From Octopus sinensis (lineage: Eukaryota): 64,000 nt of DNA. The DNA lies in contig NC_043006.1 of assembly GCF_006345805.1 (NCBI RefSeq), forward strand, positions 50,034,001 through 50,098,000. Direction: 5' to 3'. This document shows positions 1,048 through 45,301 of this stretch, piece by piece (position 1 is the first letter of the stretch; each line of letters begins with the position of its first letter). The notes under the pieces are model-generated. The model saw nothing but the letters and a program-made list of their open reading frames with translations. It did no database searches and was not told where the DNA came from. The translations under genes and the position numbers were made by a program.

Positions 1048-1080
<33 letters not shown>

Positions 1081-5798: not shown

Positions 5799-6543
5799 GA
5801 GCTTCTTTCAGTTTCCCTGTACCAATCTACTTGCAAGGGTTTGGTTGGCCTGTGGCAATAGGAGAAAACACTTGCCCAAGTCGCCACACAGTGGGACTGA
5901 AACTGGAATTATATGGTTAGGAAACAAACTTCTTACCACACAGCCACGTAGGTATATGTTTCTGTATATTAATATGCATACAGGCACAGGAGTGGCGGTG
6001 TGGTAAGTAGCTTCCTTAAGCTTGTCGTAGACAGACCTCTTTTTTTCGGCTGCTTGATGTCACATCTTTCTTCGTGAAAATATTGAACTTTGAGGCTCGA
6101 CAACAGGTAAGTGTTTGTTGTATCTTTTGAGGGCTTAGTGGAGTTTGTTGTCCTGTATTGAATATTTTTTGGTGAGCAACAGTCTCCACTCTTCTCCAGA
6201 CATTTGCCTGCCTGTGGTCGTGCATAAAAACTCACTTTGCAGTGAGAATTGTATTTTTTGAAGAGGCGTAACCCCTACGCAAAAATTAATTTGTTTACGA
6301 AAATTGTCTTCATGTCTGTGAATTTCCACTGGATTACCAAGGAGTACCAAGGCAGGAAGGACTATTTTTGGAGCTGGAGTACCTATATCGGACTTGTGGA
6401 ATATGTTGCCGTTGATTGAACTGCCTTCGTTCTTTTCTCTGTTCTGTCTTTCCGTTCTTTTTTTTTGTGTTTATTACTGAACTTTTATTTAGAACATTTG
6501 AACTTTTGTTGAACTCTTTTTTGTTTCTTTGTGGTTTTAAATT

Positions 6544-7061
6544 ATGGCAACAAAGAAAACCACTGTGCTGGAGTGGGAAATTGTGCCCCCCAAGCAGTGG
6601 ATAGAGGACCGAAATGGGAGAATGGTGGTGTTGAGGACATACTCCAAGTCACTCGACACTATCACTGTGTTCTCTCAGGACGAAATTGAAAAATAGTTGG
6701 CAGAATACATACCAACTATCAAGTATATCGCAAGGAGTGCCAAATTTGCAACAGTGTGGTTACTGTTTGACACCCCTAAAGAGGCTAGCTAGTCGAAGGG
6801 GAAAAAATTTTGTTTCTCCTCACATATCGGGGAAAGAAATTGACAAGAGGCTGGGTGAGTGGCCTGTCACCCGGAATAGAGCCTGAGTTGATAGAGGATA
6901 CTATCCGCCGGGGTCTGGGTAGCAGCGGAGCCAGGCTCTTGAAAGTTAAAAAGCATCCTGTAGCTGATTGGGTGGGGTCGAAAGCAATTTTGAACATATG
7001 GACCCAATCAACCAAAGATCTGGTCTTCCCAAATTTTCTAAAGATAGCCGGTTCTAGGTTT
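6544..7061 (+). pseudogene. 5' half of a retroelement ORF1 (gag-like), disrupted
   Basis: MATKKTTVLEWEIVPPKQWIEDRNGRMVVLRTYSKS...ATVWLLFDTP...LTYRGKK...IRRGLG...FLKIAGSRF is colinear with ORF 43368-43904. In-frame TAG at 6694, a small deletion, and truncation by minisatellite A. Confidence 0.8.
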
Positions 7062-7916
7062 CCTCCCCTTCTCCTCTCAAATCCCCTTCTCTGGAATGTT
7101 CAGCATTCTTTCCTCCCGTTCCTCCACTTCACTTCTCAAATCCACCTCTCTGAAATGTTCAACATTCCTTCACCCCATTCCTCCCCTTCCCCTCTCAAAG
7201 CCCACTATTCGCAATGTTCAACATTACTTCCACCACTTCCTCCCCTTCACTTCCCAAATCACCCTCTCTGGAATGTTTAACATTCCTTCCTCCCCTTCTT
7301 CCACTTCCCCTCACAAATTCCACTATCTGGAATGTTCAAATTCCTTCCTCCACTTCCCCTCTAAAATCCCCCTCACTGGAATGTTCAACATTCATTCCTC
7401 ACCTTCCTCCACTTCCCCTCTAAAATCCCACTCTCTGGAATGATCAACATTCCTTCCTCCCCTTTCTCCCCTTCACCTCTCAAATGTGAAGGGGAGGAAG
7501 GAATGTTGAACATTCCAGACAGGGGGATTTGAGAGGGGAAGGGGAAGAAGGCGAGGAAGGAATGTTGAACATTCCAGAGAGGGGGATTTGAGAAGTGAAC
7601 GGGAGGAAGGGGAAGAAGGAATGTTGAACATTCCAGAGAGGGGGATTTGAGAGGTGAAGGGGAGGATGGGGAGGAAAGAATGTTGAACAATCCTTCCTCC
7701 CCTTCCACCCCCTCCTCTCTCCAATCCCCCACACTGAAATGTTCAACATTCTTTCCTCCCCTTCCTCCGCTTAACCTCACAAATCCCCCTCTCTGGAATG
7801 TTCAGCATTCCTACTCCCCTTCCTCCCCTTCAACTATCAAATCCTCCTCTCTGGATTGTTCAGCCATCCTTCCTCCCCTTCCCCTCTCAATTCCCTCTCT
7901 CTAGAATGTTCGACAT
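7060..7916 (+). repeat. Minisatellite A (~50-63-bp pyrimidine-rich unit containing the palindrome GGAATGTT-C-AACATTCC); inverted segment ~7486-7685
   Basis: The unit ggaatgttcaacattccttcctccccttcccctctcaaatccccctctct is repeated. The middle block reads as the reverse complement. Confidence 0.92.
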
Positions 7917-9344
7917 GAAATCCTCGGTACTTCCCAGGACGTTTCCGACGAGATTTCCAGGAAGTTGGGGGAATCCTCGGAAGTTTCCGACGAAATTTCC
8001 AGGAAGTTGGGGGAATCCCTGGAACTTTCCAAGAAGTTTCCCACCAATTTTATAGGAATTTGTGGGATCCCCGGAACTTTCCAGGATGTTTCCCTCCGAT
8101 TCTCCCGGAAGTTTGGGAATCCCCGGAACTTTCCATGAAATCCTCGGAACTTCCCGGCGATATTTCCAGGAAGTTGGAGTATTCTCTGATCTTTCCATGG
8201 AATCCTCGGAACTTTCCATAGAATTTCCAGGAAGTTGGGGGAATCCCCCGGAACTTTCCATGGAATTCTCGGAACTTTCCAGGAAGTTTCAAACCAATTT
8301 TACAGGAAGTTTGGGAATCACCGGAACTTTCCATGATATCCATGATTTCCAGCAAGTTTCCTCCAATTTTCCAGGAAGCTGGGGGAATCCCCGGAACTTT
8401 CCGAAAATTTTTAGGAACTTACCATGGAATCATCGGAACTTTCCAACAAATTTACCAGAAAGTTGTGGAATCCCCGGAACTTTCCATGAAATCCTCGGAA
8501 CTTCCCAGGAAGTTTCCGTCCGATTTTCCAGGAAGTTTGGTATTCCCCGGAACTTTCCGTGAAATCCTGGGAACTTCCCAGGAAGTTTCTACGAGATTTC
8601 CAGGAAGTTGGGAAAATTCCTCGGACCTTTCCATGGAATCCTCGGAACTCTCCATTAAATTTTCGACTAATTTTCCAGGTAGTTGGGGGAATTCCCGGAA
8701 CTTTCCAGCAAGTTTCCGACCAATTTTACAGGAATTTGGGGAATCACCGGAACTTTCCGACAAATTTTTAGGAGGTTGGGGGATCCCCGGAACTTTTCAG
8801 GAAATTTCCGACGAAATTTCCAGAAATCTGGGAGGATCCCCGGAACTTTCCATGAATTCCTCGGAACTTTCCGGTAAGTTTCCGATAAATTTTCAATGAC
8901 CTTTGGGGAGACACCGGAACTTTCCATGAAGTTTCCGACTGATTTTTCAGGAAGTTGGGGACTCCTCGTAATTTTTCATGGAACCTAGGAACTTTCCAGG
9001 AAGTTTCCGACCAGTTTTCTAGGAAATTGGGGTATCCTCGGAACTTTCCAGTATCTTACCGATTTTCTAGGAAGTTGGGAATCCCCGGAACTTTCCGAAA
9101 ATTTTTAGGAACTTTCCATGGAAATCCTCGGAACTTTTGCGATCAATTTTCCAGGAAGTTTGGGAGACCCCGGAACTGTCCTTGAATCCTCGGAACTTCC
9201 CATGGAGTTTCCGACCAATTTTCTATGATGTTGGGAAATCCCCGGAACTGCCAATGAAATCCTTGGAACTTTCCAGGGTGTTCCTACCAATTTTCCGGGA
9301 AGTTGGGGAATCCCCGGAACTTTCCATGAAATCCTCGGAACTTT
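7917..9344 (+). repeat. Minisatellite B (GGAACTTTCC/GGGAATCCCC modules; variable ~42-73-bp higher-order units)
   Basis: Recurrent ccaggaagttgggggaatccccggaactttccatgaaatcctcggaac. The ORFs here are repetitive artefacts. Confidence 0.92.
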
Positions 9345-9394
9345 GATGAAAATTCGCTTAGGTATTTTCCGAGGATATTACTAAATAATTCAAG

Positions 9395-9725
9395 CTAAAT
9401 ATAAAGCTTGTGTGCAAATAACATCTATTTTAATTGCAACGTTGCTTGAACTCCATCGATTACAACGACAACGGATCCAATGGATCCGATTAATGGAACA
9501 GCCTGCTCGTGGAATTAACGTGCAGGTGGCTGAGCACTCAATAGACGCGCGTAACTTTACATAGCTCTCGAGAAGATTCGGCGTGACTCAGGATGTGACA
9601 AGGCTCCTTTGTATGACAGATGCAACTCATTTTTGCTTGCTGAGTGGACTGGAACAACGTGAAATAAAGAGTCTTGCTCAAAGACATGACGCGCCGCGAG
9701 TAATCGAACTCACGACCCACACGCC
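9395..9725 (-). mobile_element. tRNA-headed SINE (body Y, tail P)
   Basis: The minus strand gives gtcgtgagttcgatt (B-box), then tgagcaagactctttatttcacgttg (shared with 15949), then gagtgctcagccacctgcacgttaattccacgagcaggctgttcc (shared with 13057). Confidence 0.7.
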
Positions 9726-10569
9726 TTCACAATTGCGACCGAATTGTGACAAAGTGTAACTGAGATTAGCATTTCGAAAAAGCTCAGTATAAAGTGTCAT
9801 TGATGAGGGTAAAAATGAATTGTTAATGCAAGGTATCAGCAACCAAAGAATGTCATTGGTTTATCGTAGTCTTTATAAAGTATTTCAGAGAATTGATTGT
9901 TTTCAGCATGGTTAAATGCGCAGATTAACTAGGATTTCGTAATCCAGTAAAACTCGTTCAAATACAGAAAAAATACAGACGGCTGAAGACTGAGACAAGG
10001 AGTGATAAACAGAAGGCCTAGATGTTTAATATGTGGGGAAATGGGGCTTTTCTCCGGTTTAGTCGACCCAATTGCAACTAAAAGCGTGACTGTGGTTATA
10101 TGATCCAAAAACGTTAACGCTTATGTATGTTTTTATTGAGATAAAATGATTTCTCAAGGTTTGAGAAATGACAGAACCATCAGTTTGTTGTGGCCTTTAT
10201 AAAAGATTGCAGAAGGTTGAGTCAGGATGGACAAATGCGAGGAGTGACATGGAATTTGTAATGTCTGTATAATAGGTACACACTCGGAAAAAAGCGTATG
10301 GACAAAAACTTGAGACAGATAGTGGTAGACAGAAGGCTTAGATGTTTAATGTGTAGAGCAAGGAAACTCTTGTGATTTAGCAGACCACATTGCGAGGAAA
10401 AGCACAACTGTGGTTACACGACCTCAAAATGTTCGCGCTGGTGTATATGTTTATATGGAGATAACATGATTTATCTGAGTAACAGCAGTTACCAATAAAA
10501 GTGAATAATCGGTTTATGTGATCTTCATAAAGAACTGGTTGCTGTTAGCATGAACAAATACAAGGAGAA

Positions 10570-12760
10570 ATATAAAAATAGATGGCTTATTTTTTTATTG
10601 GCAATTTTATATCCATACCCTGTTCTGTTTAATTCACTTGTAAGGGGTATTAGGGCTATGCAGAATATTAAAGGTGAAAGTGAGTCACCTTGAAAAATTC
10701 CACAGTTGATGTTTATATTTTCTGAGGCAAGTACTCCATTAGAGTGGTATAATTGGAGATTTGTATTCCACAACGACATATTGTGCTTCAGGAAGCTTGA
10801 AATCACAGGGGAAATTTTGAAGATGTCCAGCGATCTCAAGATCCATGGATGCGGTATACTGTCGAAGGCCTTTTTATAGTCAATCCATGCGGAGCTGAGA
10901 TTTCTGCGCTTGTTGTGACAGTTCTCAAGGATCATACGATTAATTAGCAGTTGATCTTTGCATCTGTATGAGCCTCGGCGGCACCCTTTTTGTTCAATGG
11001 GGAAAATATCGTTCTTCTCCATGAATGCATATGTTTTCTCCGCCAGGATAGATGTTAGGATTTTATACGTGGTGGATAGACAGGTTATAGGCCGATAGTT
11101 TTTGGAAGGTTGGTTTCGTTATTCTTTGGGAGTAAGTAATACCACTTGCTAACCATTCAGGTGTTTTCTTTGGGTCTCTCATAATTCCATTGAGCAGCTG
11201 AACTAGCTTACCGTATGCGCATGGGAGCGATGCGACCAGAAATTCGGCACCCTATCTTTACCGGGGGATTTCCAATTATGGGCCTTCGTGAGTGCCTTTC
11301 TTAGGTCTGCTATTGTGATGTCTTCCCATGCTTGTTGCTGTAAATTTTGGTAGGATCCTTCTGTTTGTATAATCCAGTCTGCATTTATGTTGTACGTCTT
11401 CTTGTCACTCCAAATCCTTTTCCAAAAGTTTTGAACTTCTTCCATGGGAGGAGGGTCTTTAACGGTTACTTTCTCCTTCCCTATTTCTCTGTAGAATTTT
11501 TTGGCATTGTATGTGAACAGCTTATTTTGCTTGTAAAACTTGTTTCTCTTCTCAAATCTTCGTATTCTTTGGGCTTTTGCTTGGACTTTTTGTTTCAGCG
11601 TTTCTTTTATTGATATCAGTTCTTCTCTTGGTAAGGATCCAAATTTTGTCTTCATCTTTCTTCCTGTTCTGGATCTTACATCATTTCCACATATCAGTTC
11701 ATTTAATATTGATATTTCCCCTCTCATAAATTCAATCTCTTTTTCAATTTTACTTCTCCAGGTTTGATTTCTTACCAGGTTTGGTTTTCTTTGTTTTTTC
11801 GGGGGCATACAGCTGGTTTCAATTGCCCTAGCAGAAGCGTAAATAATTTCATTTAACTCAGTAAAATCAGGTTTTAATTCTTGTATTATTTCATTTGTTA
11901 CATAGTTGCCAATTTGGATTTGCATTTTATTTTGGTTTGTATTTGAGAGTTTATGAAGTGGTTCTCTATCATTCATACTTGTATGTCTTACAACTTCAAG
12001 CGTATTCAGGATTTTCTGCCTCATTTCTGCCATAGACTCTCTGTGTTCTTCAGCAAATGCGAGATCTTCAGTTACTGTTGTTTTATCATTTTCCTGGCTA
12101 TCTTTAACAGGTTCAATAGAATTTCTTGTATCTTCAGGCCTTTGCGTACTTTGGTCAGATGGCAGTCTTTCAATTAAGCCTCGTGGCGTGCTATACTGTT
12201 CATCTGATTCTTCATTTCCTTTGTGTCTTATATTTATGTCATTTTCCGTTGCGTGCTTGATCGCGCTTATTTCACTGTCTGTGAGTCTGTTATTTCTAAG
12301 GATATCCCTTCTCACATTTGTCAATTTGTTCTCGTCCAAATAGGGCCAACTGTCTTGATTCCGTGTTCTGTAAGAGTTTGCGGTGTGTCTCTCTTGAGAT
12401 GGCCTACCTAATGCATAGTAATAAGCGTATATTACTTCTTTATACTCTTCTCGGGTCCATTTGTTCTGCTTACATTTTTCTTTCTGTGGTGGTGAACTTG
12501 GAGGGCTCGAGTTGGGGAATTTCCCGTTCAAGTGACCATCCATGTCCGTATTCGGAGAAGAGTTTGTGCCAGTTGATGACTTTTCGATCCCAGGCTGGCT
12601 CTTCCCTGGGGGACGCGCTTCCAGATTAACCATAGGACAAGCGATTTGGTATACTGATTTAGTTTTCCTTTTAGTTTCCAAAAACATTTTGGTGCTACGA
12701 TAATGTTATCATTTTTGAGCTTTGATCGGCGCGTGTGGAGACGGCCATCATTGCCGTTAC
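10570..12760 (-). mobile_element. R4/Dong-clade (single-ORF, RLE-type) non-LTR retrotransposon; 5' part retained, 3' lost
   Basis: N-terminus KWTREEYKEVIYAYYY...LTNVRRDILRNNRLTDSEI, then NWKSPGKDRVPNFW, NYRPITCL, EQKGCRR, AWIDYKKAFDSIPH, GIFQGDSLSPL and KISHL. Homology ends just before the expected YMDD. A stop/frameshift lies between ORFs 11203-12687 and 10525-11022. Confidence 0.85.
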
Positions 12761-13056
12761 AATTATAATCGTACCATTATAGCAGCCGTAGTCGGCTTAT
12801 TATTGTTATTATCATCACCATTATTATCACCACTATTACTATCATCATTATCATCATCACCATCATCATCATCAATGATATTGTTTTATGTGTAGTCACA
12901 GCAGTATCTTATTTTTGTTATTTTTGTTTTTATCATTATCACCATCACAGTAGTGTCTGTCTGTGTCGTTGGCTGGCTGGCTGGCTGTCTTCAACGCCAG
13001 AATTCTTGCCTGTCAAATAATACTTTCATATTTGGTTAACATCTAAAGAACCGAGG

Positions 13057-13449
13057 TGTGGAGGCGCAATGGCCCAGTGGTTAGGGCAGCGGACTCGCGG
13101 TCATAGGATCGCGGTTTCGATTCCTAGACCGGGCGTTGTGAGTGTTTATTGAGCGAAAACACCTAAAAGCTCCACGAGGCTCCGGCAGGGGATGGTGGTG
13201 ATCCCTGCTGTACTCTTTCACCACAACTTTCTCTCACTCTTACTTCCTGTTTCTGTTGTACCTGTATTTCAAGGGGCCAGCCTTGTCACTCTCTGTGTCA
13301 CGCTGAATATCCCCGAGAACTACGTTAAGAGTGCACGTGTCTGTGGAGTGCTCAGCCACTTACACGTTAATTTCACGAGCAGGCTGTTCCGTTGATTCGG
13401 ATCAACCGGAACCCTCATCGTCGTAACCGACGGAGTGCTTCCAAATCCA
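13057..13449 (+). mobile_element. tRNA-headed SINE (body X, tail P)
   Basis: Head ggcgcaatggcccagtggttagggcagcggactcgcggtcataggatcgcggtttcgattcc with A/B boxes. Head and body are shared with 28745-29000. Confidence 0.8.
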
Positions 13450-13682
13450 AAGAGCCGAGGTGAGGTTTGTGTTGGCTGAACTGTGTGTGTGTGTGTGTGT
13501 GTGTGTGTACGTGTGTGTAGGTAGATAGATAGATTATCAGCACTACTACTATCATTATTATCATCATCACCATCATCACCATCATCATCAGTGATTTTTT
13601 TCCCTTTTTTTTTAGGTGGGATCCTATCGGTCAAAAAAAGTTCAAATGCCTACTACTACTACTAGCCTTAAGAAAAATTACG

Positions 13683-14550
13683 GAAGGGCTGTTCTGTATT
13701 GTTTGTGAATAAAGAAGTTGTGTTCGACCAGAGAGAATCTTAGCATCACTATTTTTTTTTTCCATATGCGTTTGTGTTATTGCAATAAAAAGTGTTTGTA
13801 TATTTCGTGTAAGGTAGTATTGTGGAGGTTGAAGTTGACTTTTCTAGAGATGTTTGTATGTCCAGTTAGAAGAACAGGTGTGTTTTTGCAATAAAAAGTA
13901 TATGTTTACATTTATATTTGAATATTCAGGGAGGAAGCAAAGAAAAGTCAGATTTTCATAGAAAGTTTTAAGGTTTTGTAAGTCCACAAAAAGAAAAGCG
14001 TGATGTTTTTAGCGGGAAGAAAAAGAAAAGGATGTTTACAGGGGTAATTGTGGGTATTAAAGTTTTTAAAGCTGATCGAATGTATGTTTGAAAACTGTAG
14101 ATATGTAAATTTGTAAATTTCTTAACATTTTTTGAAGGGCTGTTCTGTATTATTTGTGAATAGAGAAGTTGTGTTCGACCAGAGAGAATCTTAGCATCAT
14201 TATTTTTTTCCATGTGCGTTTGTGTTATTGCAATAAAAAGTGTTTGTATATTTCGTGTAAGGTAATATTGTGGAGGTTGAAGTTGACTTTTCTAGAGATG
14301 TTTGTATGTCTAGTTAGAAGTGTGTTTTTGCAATAAAAAGTATATGTTTACATTTATATTTGAATATTCAGGGAGGAAGCAAAGAAAAGTCAGATTTTCA
14401 TAGAAAGCTTTAAGGTTTTGTGAGTCCACAAAAAGAAAAGCGTGATGTTTTTAGAGAGAAGAAAACAAAAGGATGTTTACAGAGGCAATTGTGGGTGTAT
14501 GTTTGAAAACTGTAGATCTGTAAAATTGTAAATTTCTTAACTTATTTTGA
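13683..14550 (+). repeat. Two-copy tandem duplication, 451-bp period
   Basis: gaagggctgttctgtatt... starts at 13683 and at 14134. The copies are highly similar, with small deletions in copy 2. Confidence 0.9.
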
Positions 14551-15300
14551 AGAGAATTTTAAATACTCACAAGATATTGTAGATGTTCCAGTCTTTGAGA
14601 GTTATTTTCCCCGTTGCTAAACTGGGTCATATTAGTGTTTCTATGGCTTTCGGCTACTTAATTGTCAGAGCAGTGAGGAATACGTCCAGCCGCTGTCAAG
14701 GCTGGCGCTCCTCCTCCTCCTCCTTATTATTATTATTGAGTGAGAGAGCAGTGCATGCTATCAAAGTGACACTGGAGTAAAATTTACAAAGCCTGCCCGT
14801 CTGATAAGGGTACACCAGTCACATGCATCACAACCATATGTGCATGACATGGTGATCTCATATCAAGATAAACAGCGCATGGTCTTGCAGATGGAACCCA
14901 GTTAGAATTTTCTTTAGGTCTTGTAACCCATCCAGCTCAAAAGGTCCCTGAATAAGAGTTGTTTAAGGATGTTGAACGAAACACCCATGTTTCCAAAGGT
15001 GAATTATCCAAACCCTACAGAAGTCCTCTCAACACATGGCTATGATGCTCTCCCCCAGTACTTCTACACGTAATTAGAGATGCACATGTCGTCAACCACT
15101 AAAGGACATGCTCAACTGGTTATGGCCAAACAACTGACAAGCAAATCTGTGGTATTAAGCAGAATATTTGCTGTAGCCCATCTTTCGTACCAAGACAAAA
15201 CAATGTACATGATAACACTTCCAATCAGTTAAGATCAGTAGCCATAAGAGCCACTGCCTGGTATTTATCATCGTCATCATCATCACCGTCGTCGTCGCCG

Positions 15301-15948
<648 letters not shown>

Positions 15949-16270
15949 AAGGCGCATGGCTCAGTGCTTAGAGCGTCGAGCTTACGATCGTGAGGTTGTG
16001 AGTTCGAATCCCGGACCGGGTTGCGTGTTGTGTTCTTGAACAAGACACTTTATTTCACGTTGCTTCAGTTCACTCAGCTGTAGAAATGAGTCATGACGTC
16101 ACTAGTGCCAAGCTGTATCGGCCTTTGCCTTTCCCTTGGATAACATCAGTGGTGTGGAGAGAGAGGAGACTAGTATGCATGGGCGTCTGCTGGTCTTCCA
16201 TAAACAACCTTGCTCTGACTTGTGTCTAGGAGGGTAACTTTCTAGGTGCAATCCCATGGTTAGTCATGAC
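15949..16270 (+). mobile_element. tRNA-headed SINE (body Y, tail R)
   Basis: ggcgcatggctcagtgcttagagcg...gagttcgaatcccgg (A/B boxes), followed by ttgaacaagacactttatttcacgttg. Confidence 0.75.
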
Positions 16271-16489
16271 CGAAGGGGGTTTCAGCATATCACTTGAGTA
16301 AGGCGGCGAGCTAGGAGAATTAGTAACGCTTCGGGCAAGATGCTTAGTGTTATCACGTCCGGCATTAGATTTTGAGTTCGGCTTTGTCTATCTTTCCTTC
16401 AGGCTCAATAATTTAAGTACCAGCTGCGCACTGGGGTCAACCTGAATATCCGAGTTCCCCTTTCCAAGTATTGAGCTTATAGTAAAAAG

Positions 16490-17570
<1,081 letters not shown>

Positions 17571-18470
17571 TTGAATAGCGGAAGGAAAAGAACGTAAAGT
17601 GCAAATTTCTATTTGATTAGACATGTCTCTTCATTTACTTAATATTTACAACGAACAAAATGAATATAGTTGTAGAAATTAGGTTCACTTCACAGTTTCA
17701 GTTTTATTTGTTGTAATTGTACTTTTAGCTGGTGGAAACTAGGCGGAGAACAACAACAGCACTACCAACAGTGTCAACAGCAGCAAAAACAATAACAACA
17801 TCAAAAACACTAACGTTAATAAGATGGAGACAAACAAAAACAGCCGTACAAACGTCTAATGGCGACGTGTAAGCTTCAACAAGCATTCAAGTTCTTAATT
17901 TTGCCTTTCTGTTTCTTGCAGTTCTTTAAATGTCTCAGTCGATAAGTAGTTAGAGAAATTACTTTAGTTTCACGTTCCAACGAAATCAGATTTGATCGGC
18001 TACATGACGGTGAAACCGAGTGTGAATCTATTTTTAAAAGAATGGTCATTTATACTTGAGATTTAAAAAGACACATACACACACATGCACGCACACATAT
18101 ACACACTGAAGTGGAGAAATAATCGTCAAACGGTGATTATTAACAGATCAAGATTTAGATCTAAATCCATCGGATAACTTAATAGTATATTGTAAGAGTG
18201 ACCGAAACATACGCAGCTTAAGGATTCTGTATCAGAAATCAATGGATCGTGTGCCCAGTTGCGAAACCGACGAAAGAACATATGTGTGATCGCTCGAATG
18301 CTAAAAATAGTAGATGAATTCTCCATTAATCATGCCCTATCATCTTAAATGGAAAGGAAGGACATGTTGTATAACATAGTTCCACATATAGTTCTAGATA
18401 TAAAAATAAACAGATGAGGAAATCATTGTTAGAACACCTTTGATTATAGGTTTGCATAATTAGGGATGAA

Positions 18471-20438
18471 CTCCGGTGAGTTTGGTTGAAAATTCCTGGG
18501 AAGTTCCGGTAAGTTTGGTCGAAAAATTGCCAAGAAGTTCCGAGGATTTTCTAACTTCCGGAAAGTTTGGTCGAAACTGCCTGGGAAGTTCCGAGGATTT
18601 TCTCACTTCCGGGAAAGTTGTTCGAAAACTTCCTGGGAAGTTCCGATGATGTTCTGACTTCCGGCAAATTTGGTCAAAAATTGCCTGGGAATTTCCGATG
18701 ATTTTCTAACTTCCGGCAAATTTGGTCGAAAACTTCCTGGGAAGTTCCGAGGACTTTCTAACTTCCTAGAAAATTGGTCGAAAACTCCCTGGGGAGTTCC
18801 GAGGATTTTTTAACTTCCGGGAAATTTGATCGAAATTTTCCTGGGAAGTTCCGAGGCTTTTCTAATTTCCGGGAAGTTTGGTTGAAAACTGATTAGGAAG
18901 ATCCGAGTATATTCTAACTTCCGGTAAGTTTGGTCGAAAACAGCCCGGGAAATTCCCAGGATTTTCTGACTTCCGGGAAGTTTGGTAGAAAAATTCCTGG
19001 GAAGTTTCGAGGATTTTCTAACTTACGGAAAGTTTGGTCGAAAACAGCCTGGGAAGTTCCATGGACTTTCTAACATCCGGGAAATTTGGTCGAAAACTGC
19101 CTGGGAAGTTCAGAGGATTTTCTAAGTTCCGGGTAAATTCGTCGAAAATTTCCTGGAAAGTTTCGAGGATTTTCTTACTTCCGAGAAGTTTGGTTGAAAA
19201 TTACCTGGGAAGTTCCGAGTATTTTCTAACTTCCGGTAAATTTGGTCGAACACTTCCTGGGAACATCCGAGGATTTTCTAACTGCCTGAAAGTTTAGCCG
19301 AAAACTTCCTGGGAAATTCCGATGATTTTCTAACTTCCGGGAAGTTTGGTCGAAAACTGCCTGGAAAGTTCCGGGGACTTTCTAACTTATGGGAAATTTG
19401 GTCGAAAACTACCTAGGAATTTCCGAAGATTTCTAACTTGATGGAATTTTGGTAGAAAACGTCCTGGCAAGTTCCGAGTATTTTCTCTCTTCCGGGAAGT
19501 TTGGTCGAAATCTGCCTTGGAAGTTCCGAGTATTTTATGACTTCCGGGTAGTTTGGTCGAAAACTGCTTAACGGTTCGACAAACGTGATCGATAAATTGA
19601 CTTAGCGATTCGTGAAGCGAGATCGATAAAATGACGTAGCGTTTCGCCAAACAGGTTCGATAAAATGATCTAGTCATTCGACAAACGTGATCGATAAAAT
19701 GCCATAGCGGTTCGCCAAAGGAGATCGATAAAATGACGTAGCGCCTCGCCAAAGGATATCGATAATATGACGTTGCGGTTCGCCAAACAAGATAGATAAA
19801 ATGACGTAGCGGTTCACCAAGCGATATCGATAAAATGAAGTAGCGGTTCGCCAAACGAGATCGATAAAATGAAGTAGCGGTTCGCCAAACGAGACCGATA
19901 AACGGACGTAGCGGCTCGCCAAATAAGATCGATAAAATGACGTAGCGGTTCGCCAAACGGGTTCGATGAATGATTTAGTAGTTCGACAAACGACATCGAT
20001 AAAATGACATAGTGGTTCGCCAAACGGGTTCGATAAAATGACTTAGCGGCTCGCCAAACGAAATTGATAAAATGACGTGGCGGTTCGACATACGAGGTCT
20101 ATAAAATGACGTAGCGGCTCGCCAAACGAGATCGATAAAATGACGTAGCGGTTTGCCAAAGGGTCAGATAAAATGAATTAGCGGTTCGACAAACGAGATA
20201 GATAAAACGACGATAAAATGACTTAGCTGTTCGCCAAATGATGAAAACTTCCTGGGAAGTTCCGAGGATTTTCTAACTTCTGGAAAGTTTTGTCGAAAAC
20301 TTCCTAGGAAGTTCCGAGGATTTTCTCACTTCCGGGAAATTCGGTCGAAAACTTCCTGGGAAGTTCTGATGATTGTCTAACTTCTGCGGGAAATTTGGTC
20401 GAAAACTGCCTGGGAAATTCCGAGAATTTTCTAACTTC
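18471..20438 (-). repeat. Minisatellite B' (~52-bp unit, inverted relative of B), interrupted by minisatellite C
   Basis: Unit aaaattgcctgggaagttccgaggattttctaacttccgggaagtttggtcg. Its reverse complement shares aaatcctcggaacttcccagg and cgaccaa with array B. Confidence 0.9.
19569..20242. repeat. Minisatellite C (34-bp CpG-rich unit, ~20 copies)
   Basis: cgccaaacgagatcgataaaatgacgtagcggtt in tandem. The 34-aa periodicity of ORF 19387-19956 equals 3 x 34 bp. Confidence 0.93.
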
Positions 20439-20771
20439 ATTCCAGACATACCAAATGTCGTTAAATGCCAGACATTCTAGATATTCCTGACATTCCGGAT
20501 ATTCCAGACATTCGAGGCATTTAATGACATCAGGAATATCTGGAATGTCTCGTACGCCTGGAATGTCTGTGACATTCCTGACACTCCAGAAATTCCTGAC
20601 ATTTCTGACGGTCCCAAGACATTCCTGAAATCCTTTACATTCCAGACATTCAAGATATTTCAAACATTCCTGGCATACGAGACATTCCTGACATTCGGCA
20701 CATTTCCAGACATTCTTAACATTCCAAACATTCCTGACATCCCAGACATTTCTGAAGGTCCCAAGAAATTC
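20439..20771. repeat. Minisatellite D (~9-bp GACATTCC(A/T) unit) with a short inverted block
   Basis: Repeated cattcctga/cattccaga. The segment ~20527-20570 reads caggaatatctggaatgtc (inverted). Confidence 0.8.
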
Positions 20772-21450
20772 ATGTTCATCATTCCTTCCTCCCCTTCTCT
20801 GGAATGTTCAACATTCCCTTCTCCCCTTCCTCTCTCGAATCCCACTGTCTGGAATATTCAACATTCCTTCCTCCCCTTCCACTCTCAAATCCCCCTCTCT
20901 GGAATGTTCAACATTCCTTCTTCCCCTTCACTTTACAAATAACCCTCTCTGATATGTTCACCATTCGTTCCTCCCCGTCACTTCTCAAATCCCCCTCTCT
21001 GGAATGTTCAACATTCCCTTCTCCCTTCCTCTCTCGAATCCCACTGTCTGGAATATTCAACATTCCTTCCTCCCCTTCCCCTCTCAAATCCCCCTCTCTG
21101 GAATGTTCAACATTCCTTCCTCCCCTTCTCTGGAATCTTCAACATTCCTTCCTCCTTTTCACTTCTCAAATCCCCCTCTCTAGAGTGTTCAACATTCATT
21201 CCTCCCCTTCACCTCTCAAATCCTCCTCTCTGGAATGTTCAACATTCCTTCCTCCCCTTCACCTCTCAGGAATGTTCAACATTTCTTCCTCCCCTTCACT
21301 TCTCAAATCCCCCTCTTTGAAATGTTCAGCATTCCTTCCTTGTCTTCCTCCCCTTCCCCTCTCTTGAATGTTCAATATTCCTTCCTCCCCTTCACCTATC
21401 AAATTCCCCTCTCTGGAATGTTCAACATTTCTTCCTCCCCTTCACCTTTA
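20772..21450 (+). repeat. Minisatellite A, right block
   Basis: Same unit and same predominant orientation as 7060-7916. Confidence 0.92.
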
Positions 21451-21986
21451 GAGAAGCAGAAAATTGGCAGGCGTTTTCTGCCTTCTCTCATCAATATCAT
21501 CCTTGTTTCATCATTTACCTCATCAATGTATATGTCCAGCCCGCAAGTTACTCTTTGTAATGCCTTTATGGCAAATCTTAATGAAATAATGTAGCTTGCT
21601 TACCAACCATATGGTTCCAGGTTCAGTCCCACTACATGACACCTTGGGCAAGTGTCTTCCACTATAGCCTCAGGCATTGTGAGTGGGTTTGATAGACGGA
21701 AACTGAAAGAAGCCCGTCATATGTATATGTGTGTCTGTGTCCCCCCACTATCGCTTGACAACCGATGCTGGTGTGTTTACATCCCCATAACTTAGCAAAA
21801 GAGACCGATAGAATATGCACTAGGCTTACAAAGAATAAGTCCTGAGGTTGATTCCTTTGACTAAAGGCAGAGCTCCAGCATGGCTGCAATCAAATGACTG
21901 AAACAAATAAAATTAAATTTAAAAATATGTGTGTGAGTGTATTTATGTAAATATATATATATATGGGTATATGTCTATATATATTT

Positions 21987-41366: not shown

Positions 41367-42287
41367 CTAGCAGCATAGCCCGGCGTTGCCCGGGTATGTA
41401 AGAGCCCCTAGTAGGCAACGACTAATCCCAATCTAGTCCTTTCCCTCTAGGGAACGAAGGCGCATGTGTAGGTTGCAATGTCTTCTCTTCACTCCCAAAT
41501 AACTATCAAACAGCAATCGATAATTCAACCCAACCAATTCATACCAGGAAGAAATTACTTTACCCCCAACATTCAAACTGCTCCAGCCCTTGGAATGTCA
41601 TCCTCACTGTATGTGGCCAAGCATTATCCTGATGGTAGAATACCTATTGTCTTGGAACAAAAGATGGTCATTTTTTTTTTTTTAGCACAGGTATCGATGA
41701 ATGGTTGGATGACCAAATCCAAGCTTCTCTGCTAATAGCTGCTGCAGCCGCGAGTTATTCGAATACTTTTTTTGTTTACACTTTCTTTATAACTACCACC
41801 CCAAACGTTTTACCTTAAATGGTCCTCGGACGCTACTTGCAAACTCTTGGTTTATTATAAACCGCTTTTGTCGTGTGCATCAAAAAACTTTTTCCATTCG
41901 TTTGTTCAGTTTGGTCACTTTTGACTTTTTCGTTGTTGTCACTCACATTGCTGCCCGCTTTTTTGCCGTTTTTGTACATTTTTATACATTTTGGGATACT
42001 TACCCCACGTGTTCCGAGAGTTAAAAAGGTCGAGTTGCGTCCCCTAGACAGTCTGTAGAAAATGTGTTGAATATAAAAAGCTTAGATTCTCGACCCATGT
42101 CGAATTTATCGATTTTTTTTCAGAACTGGGGGAACTTTTCAAAATTTTCGCTGCGTTAGTTTTGAATTATGACATTGGGCTATGTGTGTGTCAAGTTTCA
42201 TCAGAATCGGTTGAAAGCCGTGGTCAGGGTGAGGGTACAACCTAACAGACACACAGACAGACAAACTGCCGTTTATATATAGAGAGA
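41367..42287 (-). mobile_element. Non-autonomous Helitron (921 bp)
   Basis: The minus strand reads A|TCTCTCTATATATAAA ... CCCGGGCAACGCCGGG (hairpin) CTATGCTG CTAG|T. Inserted between A and T with no TSD. Confidence 0.85.
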
Positions 42288-42421
42288 TATATACGACGGA
42301 CTTCTTTCAGTTTCCGTCTACCAAATCCACTCACTTGGTCAGCCCGAGGCTATAGTAGAAGATACTTGCCCAAGGTGCCACGCAATGGGACTGAACCCTG
42401 TGGTTCGTAAGCAAGCTACTT

Positions 42422-44146
42422 TTATTCATCAAATTGGCCATGAAAGCTGTACACAGATAAGTAGCTGCAGGCTGGACAAGGCCATTAATGTGATAAGGAT
42501 GATAACGATAAAAATGAATAAAAATGGGAGGGGCACTGGCGCCCGTTGACCGATAACCCCCCGAAAACACTGTTCAATTTAAAATTCAAGGAAAATTAAT
42601 ATACAGTAATTAGATACAAGTATAAAAATTCCAAAAACAAAAATTCGTTTTTCATTCATCTTCCTTGTCCGGGCCCCCAAGTAAGTTTCCTGCCGCCTGC
42701 AGGAAAGCCTGCATTGGCAGGCCCGGACGGAGGGACACAAAATCTTCATTATTGCAGCTCCTCCTGACCTCAATTAGTTCTTCTTGGATGACGACCTCTG
42801 CAGCCACCTGGGGAGGCCAACATGGACCGTCTATACAGACCGAGTTGTATTATTCTCGGTCTAGAAGACTATCCAAATACATCTCAACAGGCCCTCCCTT
42901 GAGGTAGAAAATGAAAAGTTCCACCTCTTCCTCATGGGGAGGGACCTCAACCTTTTGTCAGTGGCACAATCCCCACTAACAGAGCTTCTCGTTCCGGTGG
43001 CACACTTTCCACCAGAGGAGCCTCGGGTTCAGTTGGCGGCACAACAACATCTGCCGACCGTCTCTTGTTTCTCTTCCTTCCCCTTTTTCTTTTTGCAGTT
43101 ACGGAAGTCAGGGACTCTATCGGCACACCCAGGAGGTCCTCCTCCTCTCCCACAAGCTGCACTTTAACTGGTGAGCAACCACCATTGCTCACCTTTCTCT
43201 TTCTTTTCATTGAAGCCAACGCCTCGATGACTTCCTCCGTTTCTCCCTGCAATGGGAGAGTGGAGAGCATCTTCCCTTTTCCCTGCTCCAGAACCTAACC
43301 ACGCCCCGTGGCCTGACTACAGGCACGAGTGACACTTGGTGGTGGGGTGACCCTCAAGTATCAAAGGTTACCTTGAGCCACCCATTTTCAAAAAGTCGGG
43401 GAAAGTCATTTCACCCGCGGCCACTGGGGTCCATAGGCTCAAAGTCACCTTTGCACCCTCCCATTCGACCGCAGGTTTTATCTCTATATTTAAGAGCCTA
43501 GGCCCACTATCCCCCAGGCCACGTCGGATGGCATCTGCAATCCACTTCACTTTGGTGCCCGGGAGCAGACCACATACCCAGGCCCTTATCACCTTCTTTC
43601 CACGATATGTGGGAAGAAACAAAATCTCCTCCCATTTCAGGGGCTGGCCTGCTACAGTGCAAGCTTCCTCAGGGGTGTCAAGAAGCAGCCACACCGTGGC
43701 GTATTTGACACCCCTGGTTACATAATAATTTTTGGCTGGCAAACATTTTGCCAGCTCTTTATTAATAATACCCTTGTCGAAGAGGGTGATGGTGTTACGC
43801 GACCTAGAATAGGTGCGTAGTACCACCGTCCTCCTCTCAAGGTTTTTAATCCATTGCTTAGGTGGGACAATCTCCCACTCTAAGGCACTTTTTATATTTG
43901 CCATGTTAAAAAGAAGAAAGAAAGTCCAAATAAATTAACGAGAAGTCCAAAAAGAAATAAACAAGTCAGTCCAAAAAATGAATAAAAAATAAAATTCAAA
44001 AGCAACGCAAAAGCAGTTCCAAAAAGAAAGAAAAACGGCCTTATGCTGATGTTGTTCTTTTTTCTTCAGTTCAATATTGGACAGAGCCAACACACTCACA
44101 TCCACCTCGGTTCTCTGTAAGAAGCAACAGCAACGCACATGTGCGG
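42422..44146 (-). mobile_element. ORF1-only L1/Tx1-type (HAL1-like) retroelement, copy 2, 1725 bp
   Basis: Perfect 15-bp TSD gtaagcaagctactt (42407-42421 and 44147-44161). 243-nt T-rich 5' UTR, one decayed ORF, and a 230-nt 3' UTR ending ATGAATAA. No EN or RT motifs. Confidence 0.85.
42652..43904 (-). pseudogene. Retroelement ORF1 (gag-like, degenerate CCHC zinc knuckle), with stops and frameshifts
   Basis: Reading through the stop after FLKMGGSR gives PLILEGHPTTK-C-HS-C-L*SG-H-GAWL-G, which is CX2CX4HX4(C>G). A basic KRKRGRKRNKRR segment and an acidic C-terminus follow, with TGA at 42652-42654. Confidence 0.75.
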
Positions 44147-45301
44147 GTAAGCAAGCTACTTACCACACAGCCACTCCTAAGCCTATATATATATATATAT
44201 GCAGATATCGAATAGTGAGAATGGGGGCTGAACACTTCATTGATACATCAATATTCTTTATTTGTGATTTAATGAGTCTACCATTGGTTTCATGCTGATA
44301 AATTCTTACCAATCATCAAGCCTGTCACATTGGACATTGGTAACTTGTCTCCATGGAATATATATATATGATGTAAAGTTTTGATTATTGAATTATATCC
44401 TCTTCCGAGGAGGCTAGATCAATCACTTGATGGCAGTTGGTATCAACACCAAATGGGAAAAGGGAGACACATGCAAAAGTTAAGTATTCTCCAAAATTTA
44501 CATGCAATTAAAGAAAAGACAGTCTGATTGTCTGAAGACAAGGGAATAGCTGTAGGTACATTTTTCTTACTCAATAGGTGTCATCAGCACAGCAATTGTC
44601 CTGCCTTAGTTCAGCAAACAAGGCATATAGACATATGCAAAGAAGAAAGAGGAAGTGAGAACACATTTATGGCCAAGATAATTTGCAATACAGTGGCAAG
44701 AAGCATGTATTTGAACAATAAAAATGAATAGGGGTATGTTAAATAAGAGAGAAGATAAATTCTTGATGTACTGAAATTATCGCCAATTCTAGAGAGTAGA
44801 TAAACTAATTGCTTTGAAGTATCTGGTATCAACTCCAGATGAGAAGGGTAGACAATTGCAAAAGTCAAGCATTCTCTAAAATTTGCATACCATTAAGGAA
44901 AAGACAGCCAGAGTTAGTAATTAATCAGTTTATCAAAAATTTTGAATGATTTGTAATTTTCAAACTTTAGAGATTAGGAATCTGGGAAAAAAAATTCAAA
45001 ATATTTTGCCTCATTTCCATAATTTTTGCATTTTAGACTTCTTTTTTCAAAAATAAATACAGTAACAAAAAGGGTTAATACCTACAACTTTAATTTGGGT
45101 AATAGTTAAGAATTTTCTGTAAAAAAAGAAAGTGGTGAGAGGGGGATTCAAAATGAACCTTGCTTCAAAGCTAAATTTGTGAAAAAATTTATTTTGCTTA
45201 ATTGTAATCTCCAATGTTTAGTATGAGGGTGGAGGAGACCAAAATCTTAATAACCTCCATCAGTTTTCTCAAACTTCTGTTCAAGTTCGTCATGTTTATA
45301 T

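What the first reader, a model, noticed from the sequence alone, without database searches (positions are those of the whole stretch)
42407..44161. Candidate new system: a sequence-specific ORF1-only retrotransposon that targets the head of an abundant SINE
Seen: a 1725-bp element with a perfect 15-bp TSD (AAGTAGCTTGCTTAC) lies between the A-box and B-box of a family 1 SINE head. A second, clearly diverged relative (6019-21590, opposite strand, 20 kb away) lies in another copy of the same SINE at the same nucleotides. The two ORF1s look only about half identical by eye, so they are independent insertions rather than a segmental duplication. Established: Tx1-clade LINEs are often target-specific (Tx1L/Tx2L in DNA transposons, Keno in U2 snRNA genes, Dewa in tRNA arrays), and HAL1 elements encode only ORF1 and borrow ORF2. 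Inference: this is a HAL1-like element, mobilised in trans by a Tx1-like endonuclease/RT that recognises a SINE. It would be a hyperparasite that uses a high-copy SINE as a safe landing pad and breaks that SINE's Pol III promoter. I know of no description of this combination, but I cannot confirm novelty.
Basis: partly seen in the sequence, partly recalled or inferred. Interest (0 to 1): 0.92.

Follow-up and report, generated by a model that had tools for sequence, protein, structure and literature searches.

The report
Octopus retrotransposon that targets a SINE
A small family of LINE-type jumping genes in the Octopus sinensis genome inserts at one exact spot inside an abundant short repeat (a SINE); the copies seen have lost the enzyme gene, so they must be moved by a relative not yet found. 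This is a new target for a known kind of site-specific element, not a new kind of system.

Summary
A 1725-bp element (42422-44146, minus strand) sits between the A-box-like and B-box-like motifs of a SINE head, with a perfect 15-bp duplication (AAGTAGCTTGCTTAC). A diverged relative (6020-21588, plus strand) sits at the same nucleotides of another SINE copy. A third copy, on another chromosome of the same genome (Octopus sinensis), has its 5' junction at the same site. The host SINEs have unrelated flanks and different tails, so these are independent insertions. The encoded protein is a real LINE ORF1: a probable RRM region plus a CCHC knuckle. A distant homologue in Argonauta lies just upstream of an endonuclease/reverse-transcriptase ORF2 that aligns end to end with human L1 ORF2p. 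None of the three octopus copies shows an ORF2, and both window ORF1s are pseudogenes. "Site-specific L1/Tx1-type element" is well supported. "HAL1-like ORF1-only lineage moved in trans" is plausible but rests on two complete copies, and no partner was found. Tx1-clade LINEs that target other transposons, with non-autonomous passengers sharing the target, are already described. I therefore call this a new member of a known kind. No genome-wide census or Repbase/Dfam check was possible here.

The parts
42422..44146 (-). Copy 1 of the element, 1725 bp, complete at both ends: 5' UTR, decayed ORF1, 3' UTR. No ORF2.
   Evidence: Bounded by the perfect 15-bp duplication. The only other match in the window is copy 2. 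No similarity to an L1-type ORF2 (best E 0.45).
44147..44161 (-). Target-site duplication at the element's 5' side (AAGTAGCTTGCTTAC)
42407..42421 (-). Target-site duplication at the element's 3' side (AAGTAGCTTGCTTAC)
44162..44183 (-). 5' piece of host SINE 1 upstream of the target, including the A-box-like TGGCTGTGTGG at 44163-44173
   Evidence: 100% match to SINE head positions 6-38; motif read directly
42287..42406 (-). Rest of the host SINE 1 head and body downstream of the target, including the B-box-like GGTTCAGTCCC at 42387-42397. The SINE tail continues leftwards.
   Evidence: 87.8% match to SINE positions 23-170; alignment with other SINE copies
43905..44146 (-). 5' UTR of copy 1 (242 nt). 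About 280 nt shorter than in copy 2 and L001, but with a similar 5' terminus (GCACATGTGCGTTG...GTTGCTTC).
43368..43904 (-). ORF1 N-terminal region, 178 codons ending at a premature TAA. Probable RRM-like region.
   Evidence: 59% identical to O. sinensis LOC115225585 (P0001). 52 distant relatives. Low-confidence model whose listed top 50 fold matches are tandem-RRM proteins.
43308..43367 (-). Decayed CCHC zinc knuckle of ORF1 (KCHSCL*SGH...), with an in-frame TAG and a deletion that removes the last Cys
   Evidence: Alignment to the P0001 knuckle region (...KFHLCLEPGHIKKNCP)
42947..43270 (-). Frame-shifted continuation of ORF1 (acidic/basic tail, KRKRGRKRNKRR)
   Evidence: tblastn with P0001 residues 195-279, E 5e-8, in another frame
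42649..42945 (-). Further reading frame of about 99 codons with one stop, of unknown nature. Possibly the C-terminal part of an ancestral long ORF1. Not an ORF2 remnant.
   Evidence: Read. No hit in the 5.8-billion protein set. A colinear but non-significant match to the C-terminus of the Argonauta ORF1 (E 3.6). An HMM of C-termini gave no hit.
42422..42648 (-). 3' UTR of copy 1. About the last 55 nt are shared with copy 2. It ends ...ATGGCCAATTTGATGAATAA with no poly(A).
6020..21588 (+). Copy 2 of the element (diverged subfamily): 5' UTR 6020-6544, decayed ORF1 6545-7056, 14.4-kb interior of satellites and nested elements 7060-21447, 3' end 21448-21588
6005..6019 (+). Target-site duplication of copy 2, 5' side (AAGTAGCTTCCTTAA), preceded by the SINE head at 5983-6004
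21589..21603 (+). Target-site duplication of copy 2, 3' side (ATGTAGCTTGCTTAC), followed by the rest of host SINE 2 to about 21900

Best explanation
These are copies of a target-specific non-LTR (LINE-type) retrotransposon family of the L1/Tx1 group in Octopus sinensis. Insertion is by target-primed reverse transcription at one fixed site in the head of an abundant SINE.

Inferred mechanism: an endonuclease nicks the bottom strand at GGT^AAG (top-strand notation). The exposed ...CTACTT-3'OH primes on the element RNA, which ends ...GAAUAA without poly(A). The top strand is cut 15 bp downstream (TTAC^CAACC). This gives the constant 15-bp duplication and a constant orientation.

Shown: the copies in the window carry only a 5' UTR, an ORF1 (probable RRM region plus CCHC knuckle) and a conserved 3' tail. 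They have no endonuclease/RT gene, and their ORF1s are broken.

Inferred: they are non-autonomous. They must have been copied in trans by the endonuclease/RT of an autonomous relative that recognises the same 3' tail and the same SINE site, and that relative has not been found. Each insertion separates the A-box-like and B-box-like motifs of its host SINE by 1.7 to 15.6 kb, so that SINE copy is presumably dead as a Pol III unit.
For: Same-site insertions. Copy 1 and copy 2 have 15-bp duplications of SINE positions 23-37. A third copy (L001, chromosome CM016886.1 of the same assembly; window = CM016868.1) has its 5' junction right after the same ...AAGTAGCTTGCTTcC.

Independence. The outer flanks are unrelated and the SINE tails differ. 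Host SINE 1 and host SINE 2 are 86.5% identical, the same as any two SINE copies (81-93%), whereas the elements are 65% identical.

LINE identity. The ORF1 family has 52 relatives, and every one that carries a source name is from an octopod. Most relatives read carry a knuckle of the form (E/D)GR.P.C..CG..GH....C, with Pfam zf-CCHC above its cut-off in two of nine scanned. The relative P0040 in Argonauta hians lies 39 bp upstream of an ORF2 with Exo_endo_phos, RVT_1 and zf-RVT domains. That ORF2 aligns over its full length to human L1 ORF2p (E 4e-42). The Argonauta element has a 16-bp duplication and a poly(A)-less tail ...GGCGAATAAAGAAATG that resembles the tail of copy 2 (p 0.0025).

The 3' tails of copy 1 and copy 2 are conserved (0 of 2000 shuffles). 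There are no terminal repeats.

No ORF2. None in copy 1. None in sense orientation inside copy 2, and none within 10 kb downstream in L001.

Precedent. Tx1-clade elements target other transposons with duplications of about 16 bp, and carry non-autonomous passengers to the same target (PMC4494074).
Against: Only three insertions could be examined, and only two have both junctions. No genome-wide census was possible. No autonomous partner with this tail and target was found, so sequence-specific cleavage is inferred and not shown. Clade placement (Tx1 versus L1 proper) is untested because no ORF2 of this family is in hand. The nearest autonomous relative shares only about 24% ORF1 identity. The RRM assignment rests on a poor model (pLDDT 44.5). 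Two copies in one 64-kb window is odd for a family with so few annotated proteins, and I cannot explain it.
Confidence: 0.72

Rival explanations
1. A true HAL1-like lineage. The family has been ORF1-only since before the two subfamilies split. It replicates as such, with ORF1 kept functional in master copies, and depends on a Tx1-like partner that targets the SINE. This refines the best explanation and does not contradict it.
For: Both complete copies, from subfamilies only 65% identical, lack ORF2. In copy 1 the coding region runs straight into the 3' UTR and is colinear with the whole Argonauta ORF1. One genomic copy (P0001) still has an open 281-codon ORF1. Relatives P0002 and P0008 come from contigs of 1.7-1.9 kb, which is a hint only.
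Against: Both window ORF1s are broken. Copy 2's interior is replaced by 14 kb of satellites and nested elements, so its original content is unknown. The L001 copy breaks off about 130 bp after ORF1. Two copies cannot separate a lineage from independent deletions. No test of selection on ORF1 was possible.
Confidence: 0.4
2. One ancestral SINE-element chimera, spread by segmental duplication or by gene conversion/ectopic recombination between SINE copies. No site-specific endonuclease would be needed.
For: Two copies lie within 21 kb of each other in one window. The SINE offers abundant homology.
Against: The outer flanks are unrelated and the host SINEs have different tails. The host SINEs are no more alike than random SINE pairs (86.5% against 81-93%), while the elements are far more diverged (65%). 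A third copy lies on another chromosome. The 5' homology arm would be only about 37 bp. The copies are in opposite orientations on the chromosome.
Confidence: 0.06
3. Position-specific, not sequence-specific, integration. The integration complex would be tethered to Pol III factors (TFIIIC/TFIIIB) bound to the SINE's internal promoter, as for Dictyostelium TRE elements or yeast Ty3 at tRNA genes. Alternatively, read-through element RNA carrying SINE sequence could anneal to the target and guide it.
For: The site lies exactly between the A-box-like and B-box-like motifs. The element and the SINE always have the same orientation.
Against: Identical nucleotide positions on both strands in all copies suggest direct sequence recognition. 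From general knowledge, tethered systems usually scatter over several bp. The occupied SINEs are old and mutated copies (host 1 has a 7-bp deletion next to the B-box-like motif) and are unlikely to be active Pol III units.
Confidence: 0.1

Closest known systems
Tx1-clade target-specific LINEs: Tx1L in the piggyBac element Tx1D, Tx1-Mar in Mariner-N4_AMi, Tx1-9_AMi in Harbinger, Keno in U2 snRNA genes, Kibi/Koshi in microsatellites (Kojima & Fujiwara 2004; Kojima 2015, PMC4494074). Mutsu in 5S rRNA genes is listed as a target-specific element in PMC3706591; its Tx1-clade placement is from my own knowledge.
   Same: APE-type LINE group with an ORF1. Insertion at one fixed sequence of a multicopy target, which is often another transposon. 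A fixed duplication of about 15-16 bp, a defined poly(A)-less 3' end and a constant orientation.
   Different: The target here is the head of a SINE, which I did not find among the described targets. No ORF2 of this family is in hand, so clade membership by RT phylogeny is untested. The nearest autonomous relative (Argonauta) is L1-like by comparison with solved structures, but was not placed relative to Tx1.
SINEU-3 / Tx1-Mar in crocodilians (PMC4494074)
   Same: A non-autonomous element found almost only at the same site of another transposon as its presumed autonomous Tx1 partner. In other words, a passenger that inherits target specificity in trans.
   Different: SINEU-3 is a short, non-coding, snRNA-derived element. 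The octopus element is a LINE derivative that keeps its 5' UTR, ORF1 and 3' UTR.
HAL1 (half-L1) of mammals and other internally deleted LINEs such as Bov-A and Vingi derivatives (Bao & Jurka 2010, as cited in PMC4494074)
   Same: A LINE derivative that keeps ORF1 and the termini, lacks ORF2, and must use ORF2p in trans.
   Different: HAL1 is not target-specific and is known from many copies with ORF1 under selection (own knowledge). Here there are two complete copies, both with a broken ORF1, and a lineage-wide ORF1-only state is not shown.
Octopus tRNA-derived SINEs OR1/OR2/OK (Ohshima & Okada 1994; OR1 is listed as a CORE-SINE in PMC4824008)
   Same: The host repeat has A-box-like and B-box-like motifs. 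It also has a central CCTTGGGCAAGT...GCCTC stretch that, from my memory of the MIR/CORE consensus, looks CORE-like.
   Different: I had no reference sequence, so the family was not assigned. ARAGORN and Rfam did not call the head a tRNA.

Membership tests
Non-LTR retrotransposon (LINE), L1/Tx1 group | ORF1 protein of the RRM + CCHC zinc-knuckle type, encoded upstream of ORF2 | tested here: met
   ORF1 is homologous to P0001 (59%) and to 52 relatives; most relatives read carry the knuckle (E/D)GR.P.C..CG..GH....C. Pfam zf-CCHC passes its cut-off in two of nine relatives scanned. The homologue P0040 lies immediately upstream of an APE/RT ORF2. The RRM fold is only suggested: poor model, with tandem-RRM proteins as all listed fold matches.
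Non-LTR retrotransposon (LINE), L1/Tx1 group | ORF2 with an apurinic-like endonuclease and a reverse transcriptase | tested here: not met
   Absent from copy 1 (best E 0.45). Absent in sense orientation from copy 2 and from 10 kb downstream in L001. Present only in the distant Argonauta relative. The window copies are therefore non-autonomous derivatives and not complete members.
Non-LTR retrotransposon (LINE), L1/Tx1 group | Signature of target-primed reverse transcription: target-site duplication, no LTRs or TIRs, defined 3' end | tested here: met
   15-bp duplications. The termini CCGCACATG... and ...GATGAATAA are neither direct nor inverted repeats of each other. The 3' tail is conserved between copies.
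Tx1 clade (target-specific L1-group LINEs) | RT phylogeny clusters with Tx1 reference elements | not testable with these tools
Tx1 clade (target-specific L1-group LINEs) | Copies inserted at one specific sequence of a repeated target | tested here: met
   3 of 3 5' junctions and 2 of 2 3' junctions are at the same SINE nucleotides. The sample is very small.
HAL1-like ORF1-only non-autonomous LINE | ORF2 absent as a family-wide, replicating architecture | tested here: inconclusive
   2 of 2 complete copies lack ORF2. Copy 2's interior has been overwritten by satellites and nested elements, and the L001 copy is broken.
HAL1-like ORF1-only non-autonomous LINE | ORF1 kept intact or under purifying selection | tested here: inconclusive
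   ORF1 is broken in both window copies. It is open for 281 codons in P0001. There are too few copies for a dN/dS test.
HAL1-like ORF1-only non-autonomous LINE | Shares its termini with an identifiable autonomous partner | not testable with these tools
   No octopus genome collection can be searched by DNA. Metagenome scans and exact-protein look-ups found nothing.
tRNA-derived SINE (the host repeat) | Internal Pol III promoter (A and B boxes) and a tRNA-like head | tested here: inconclusive
   TGGCTGTGTGG matches TRGCNNAGTGG at 10 of 11 positions. GGTTCAGTCCC matches GGTTCGANNCC at 9 of 11. Both consensus sequences are from general knowledge and the motifs were read directly. ARAGORN found no tRNA, and Rfam gave no tRNA match at E<=1.

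The most novel reading that the evidence does not exclude
Octopus genomes harbour a lineage of ORF1-only, HAL1-like retrotransposons that live only inside the head of the genome's most abundant SINE. They would be carried there by an undescribed autonomous L1/Tx1-type LINE whose endonuclease recognises that SINE sequence. This would be the first LINE system specialised on a SINE as its landing site, and it would inactivate SINE source copies as a side effect.
Probability: 0.3. Interest if true: 0.6.

Novelty: new member of a known kind. Interest (0 to 1): 0.45.

Why it matters
Target-specific LINEs show how mobile elements persist by landing in harmless multicopy sequence, and they are studied as natural templates for site-directed gene insertion. 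A family aimed at a SINE head would add a new class of target. SINEs make up about 12% of the genome in the related O. vulgaris (PMC13282606), so this would be by far the most abundant target known for such an element. It would also be a case of one retroelement parasitising another that itself depends on LINEs. Octopus genomes are rich in active LINEs and SINEs, so a genome-wide tally of occupied and empty sites could give clean insertion-polymorphism markers. It could also lead to the endonuclease that reads this 15-bp-plus site.

Tried and rejected
1. Shared 3' tail between the SINE and the element, which would have implied the same partner LINE. A CATGGCC match caught my eye, but the alignment score is not above shuffles (p 0.12 and 0.45). 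Rejected.

2. The 99-codon frame downstream of ORF1 as a conserved ORF1 C-terminal domain (an FGDDVG-like motif in P0004, P0031, P0040 and P0025). An HMM of those C-termini did not hit it. The colinear tblastn match has E 3.6. Not supported, though not excluded.

3. The same frame as an ORF2 remnant. No hit to the Argonauta ORF2, to Pfam or to the 5.8-billion protein set.

4. Finding more copies. The third homologue search, with a 21-sequence alignment, was swamped by low-complexity tails and returned only P0001 and P0040. Metagenome scans with the protein and with the 3' junction pattern were empty. Exact look-ups of three copy-1 ORFs were empty.

5. A partner LINE in the window. The RT/APE ORFs at 1075-3752(-) look RTE-like. 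The RT at 10525-11022(-) is antisense and nested in copy 2. Neither has the tail or the target.

6. A conserved RNA structure in the 3' UTR. With two sequences there is no covariation, and folding energies are not unusual (z 0.09 and -1.79).

7. Structure of ORF1. The alignment had only three sequences, mean pLDDT was 44.5, and TM-scores were about 0.2. Only the topology, and the fact that all listed top matches are tandem-RRM proteins, is of any use.

8. The profile search against the sequences of solved structures gave nothing relevant.
Full report
WHERE THE WINDOW IS FROM. An intronless 291-codon ORF at 50089-50964(-) is on record in Octopus sinensis assembly GCA_006345805.1, chromosome record CM016868.1. 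The 2876 bp fetched around it match the window exactly. This places the window at about 50,034,001-50,098,000 of that record. Everything below therefore concerns the O. sinensis genome.

THE OBSERVATION. The 15-mer AAGTAGCTTGCTTAC occurs without mismatch at 42407-42421 and 44147-44161 on the minus strand and encloses 1725 bp. Outside these repeats lie the two halves of one SINE. Head positions 6-38 are at 44146-44178, and positions 23-170 are at 42287-42421. SINE positions 23-37 are thus present twice, which is what a target-site duplication looks like. The A-box-like TGGCTGTGTGG is at 44163-44173(-) and the B-box-like GGTTCAGTCCC at 42387-42397(-), so the insert lies between them. ARAGORN and Rfam do not call the head a tRNA, so 'tRNA-derived' rests on these motifs and on the literature on octopus SINEs (Ohshima & Okada 1994, cited in PMC4824008).

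The second copy is bounded by AAGTAGCTTCCTTAA (6005-6019) and ATGTAGCTTGCTTAC (21589-21603). The SINE head lies before it and the SINE body after it. Seven other SINE heads in the window read straight through the site.

INDEPENDENT INSERTIONS. The sequences outside the two host SINEs are unrelated, and the two SINEs have different 3' tails. Over head and body they are 86.5% identical, within the 81-93% range of any two SINE copies in the window. The inserts are far more diverged than that. A duplicated SINE-element chimera is therefore excluded.

A third copy turned up through the only close protein relative, O. sinensis LOC115225585 (P0001; 59% identity). Its locus L001 is on another chromosome record, CM016886.1. 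There, the sequence GGCTGAGGCATGGCTGTGTGGTAAGTAGCTTGCTTcC runs directly into a 5' UTR that aligns with that of copy 2. That makes three of three 5' junctions and two of two 3' junctions at the same nucleotides, always in the orientation of the SINE. With about nine sites per 64 kb, a random hit has a probability of order 7e-5. A fourth, truncated copy is implied by the gene model P0009. Its first 46 matched residues are this ORF1, and the rest matches the integrase core domain (rve), presumably from a nested element. I could not fetch that locus.

ANATOMY OF COPY 1, read on the minus strand.
- 5' UTR of 242 nt (44146-43905).
- ORF1, open for 178 codons (43904-43368) and ending at a TAA where P0001 has Tyr.
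- The same frame then continues through a decayed knuckle, KCHSCL*SGH..., aligned to the P0001 knuckle region (...KFHLCLEPGHIKKNCP). It has a TAG and a deletion that removes the last Cys.
- After a frameshift comes the acidic/basic tail (42947-43270).
- A further 99-codon frame with one stop follows (42649-42945). It has no relatives in the protein set, no Pfam match and no similarity to an L1-type ORF2. It shows a colinear but non-significant match to the C-terminus of the long Argonauta ORF1 (E 3.6), and an HMM of such C-termini failed to hit it. I leave it as 'possibly the end of an ancestral long ORF1'.
- 3' UTR of 227 nt, ending ...ATGGCCAATTTGATGAATAA with no poly(A).

ANATOMY OF COPY 2.
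- 5' UTR of 525 nt.
- The same ORF1, with in-frame stops and a frameshift, up to ...FLKIAGSR.
- 14.4 kb of satellite arrays, with units of 59, 62-73, 52 and 34 bp, plus microsatellites and an antisense RT-bearing element.
- The last 141 nt; about the last 55 nt align with the 3' end of copy 1, and 0 of 2000 shuffles reach that score.

WHAT THE PROTEIN IS. A full HMMER scan of 1.84 billion representatives found 52 relatives at E<=1e-3. All those that carry a source name come from octopods: O. sinensis, O. vulgaris, O. bimaculoides and Argonauta hians. They share an N-terminal region of about 180 residues, in most followed by a knuckle of the form (E/D)GR.P.C..CG..GH....C. Pfam recognises only the zinc knuckle.

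The decisive context comes from P0040 in Argonauta hians (locus L002). Its ORF (8001-9584) is followed 39 bp later by an 812-codon ORF with Exo_endo_phos and RVT_1 domains. A 291-codon ORF with zf-RVT follows. The 812-residue ORF aligns end to end with human LINE-1 ORF2p (8sxt, E 4e-42). The whole Argonauta unit is flanked by a 16-bp duplication, TCTTCAACTTATGTTT, and ends ...GTGGCGAATAAAGAAATG without poly(A). That tail resembles the tail of copy 2 (p 0.0025).

The window ORF is therefore an ORF1 of an L1/Tx1-type LINE. An AlphaFold model built from a three-sequence alignment is poor (mean pLDDT 44.5). Its better part has a beta-alpha-beta-beta-alpha-beta order, and all listed Foldseek matches are tandem-RRM proteins such as SFPQ/NONO, HuR and Sxl. 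From general knowledge (Khazina & Weichenrieder 2009), this fits the 'RRM plus CCHC' ORF1 type, but it is only suggestive.

NO ORF2. tblastn with the Argonauta ORF2 finds nothing in copy 1 (best E 0.45). It finds nothing in sense orientation in copy 2. In L001 the only ORF2 hit lies about 9.6 kb upstream of the ORF1, so there is none within 10 kb downstream. The two RT hits in the window belong to other LINEs. One is RTE-like at 1075-3752(-). The other is antisense inside copy 2. The piece of L1/Tx1-like ORF2 at L001 2-379 has its own tail (...AATAAAGAAATATG) and is not in a SINE. The autonomous source of the endonuclease and RT for this family is therefore not in any sequence I could reach.

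MECHANISM.
Shown: a constant 15-bp duplication, a constant orientation, defined 5' and 3' termini, a conserved 3' tail, and a LINE ORF1.
Inferred: target-primed reverse transcription. The bottom strand is nicked at GGT^AAG, the terminal TT of the primer pairs with the AA at the end of the RNA, and the top strand is nicked 15 bp downstream.
Inferred: mobilisation in trans by a partner whose endonuclease reads the SINE head.

I considered two rivals for the same-site pattern. Gene conversion between SINEs would have to work with a 37-bp arm and would have to explain why host SINEs are no more alike than random pairs. Tethering to Pol III factors would not be expected to give nucleotide-exact junctions on both strands, and the occupied SINEs are old, mutated copies.

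Whether the family is a HAL1-like lineage or a set of separately deleted copies cannot be decided from two complete copies. Both subfamilies lack ORF2, which speaks for a lineage. But copy 2's interior has been overwritten, and both ORF1s are dead.

COMPARISON WITH WHAT IS KNOWN. Many Tx1-clade LINEs are target-specific. Described targets include a piggyBac element (Tx1D), Mariner-N4_AMi, Harbinger and LTR elements, as well as U2, U5 and 5S genes, satellites and microsatellites. Duplications such as the 16-bp AGGTTCCCATCAGCAT are reported. The non-coding SINEU-3 is found almost only at the Mariner site of its presumed partner Tx1-Mar (PMC4494074; see also PMC3706591). Internally deleted LINEs are established too, including HAL1 (cited in PMC4494074). 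O. vulgaris has 13 recently active L1-Tx1 families, and SINEs make up 11.6% of its genome (PMC13282606).

My five full-text searches found no description of a LINE that targets a SINE, or of this octopus family. Repbase, Repbase Reports and Dfam are not searchable here. I therefore rate it a new member of a known kind: a new target, with an ORF1-bearing passenger.

OPEN POINT. Two copies among nine SINE heads in one 64-kb window is far more than the handful of annotated proteins would suggest. Either the family is much more numerous than gene annotation shows, since repeats are masked before annotation, or there is local clustering. Only a census will tell.

Noticed in passing
window 7060-21447: The interior of copy 2 is a 14.4-kb block of satellites. 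A 59/50-bp unit (TTCCTCCCCTTCACCTCTCAAATCCCCCTCTCTGGAATGTTCAACATTCC) lies at both edges (7060-7916 and 20772-21447), partly inverted at 7486-7693. Inside are arrays with 62-73-bp, 52-bp and 34-bp units, (TAA)n and (TA)n. These units occur nowhere else in the window, L001 or L002. It is unclear whether the array arose inside the element or was inserted.
   Followed up: partly
window 10525-12687 (-): An antisense ORF pair nested in copy 2. It consists of a 494-codon ORF with no Pfam match and a 165-codon RVT_1 fragment. This is an unrelated LINE, only 24.6% identical to the Argonauta RT.
   Followed up: partly
window 1075-3752 (-): A LINE with Exo_endo_phos and RVT_1 domains and a C-terminus ...RIPWTARLTNGEVL... 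that, from memory, looks RTE/BovB-like. It has no ORF1, and its reading frame is split into several ORFs.
   Followed up: partly
window 47864-48733 (+): A 289-codon ORF with Mos1-type HTH_48 and mariner Transposase_1 domains: a mariner-like DNA transposon remnant.
   Followed up: no
window 50089-50964 (-): An intronless 291-codon ORF with a tRNA_bind domain (PF01588), on record as a called gene in O. sinensis. It may be a retrogene or a single-exon gene of the EMAP-II/AIMP1-like kind. It served to place the window at CM016868.1, about 50.03-50.10 Mb.
   Followed up: partly
L002 7790-13258 (Argonauta hians BAAFZT010000045.1): An apparently full-length L1/Tx1-type LINE with a 16-bp duplication TCTTCAACTTATGTTT. 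It has a 527-codon ORF1, an ORF2 split into 812 + 291 codons (APE, RT, zf-RVT), and no poly(A). This is the nearest autonomous relative of the window element that I found.
   Followed up: partly
L001 1-640 (O. sinensis CM016886.1): The C-terminal end of another L1/Tx1-like ORF2, 44% identical to the Argonauta one. Its tail ...CATAATAAAGAAATATG is not inserted in a SINE. So not all octopus elements of this group share the SINE target.
   Followed up: partly
protein P0009 (O. sinensis XP_029639579.1; locus not fetched): A gene model that fuses the first ~46 residues of this ORF1 (MATKKDKVLEWEIVPPKKW...) to a retroviral-type integrase core (rve). This is probably a further copy of the element interrupted by an LTR retrotransposon and mis-annotated as one gene.
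   Followed up: no
proteins P0002, P0053-P0055, P0008, P0010 (Logan assemblies): Distant ORF1 relatives that sit on contigs of only 1.7-1.9 kb in several sequencing runs. This is about the size of copy 1 and may hint at other short ORF1-only elements. The contigs could not be looked up.
   Followed up: no
window 42530-42560 (-) and 21450-21490 (+): Each 3' UTR can form a hairpin about 100-130 nt from its 3' end (GGGGGG...CCCCUC in copy 1; GAGAAGCAGAAAA...UUUUCUGCCUUCUC in copy 2). Neither folding energy nor covariation supports this with only two sequences.
   Followed up: partly
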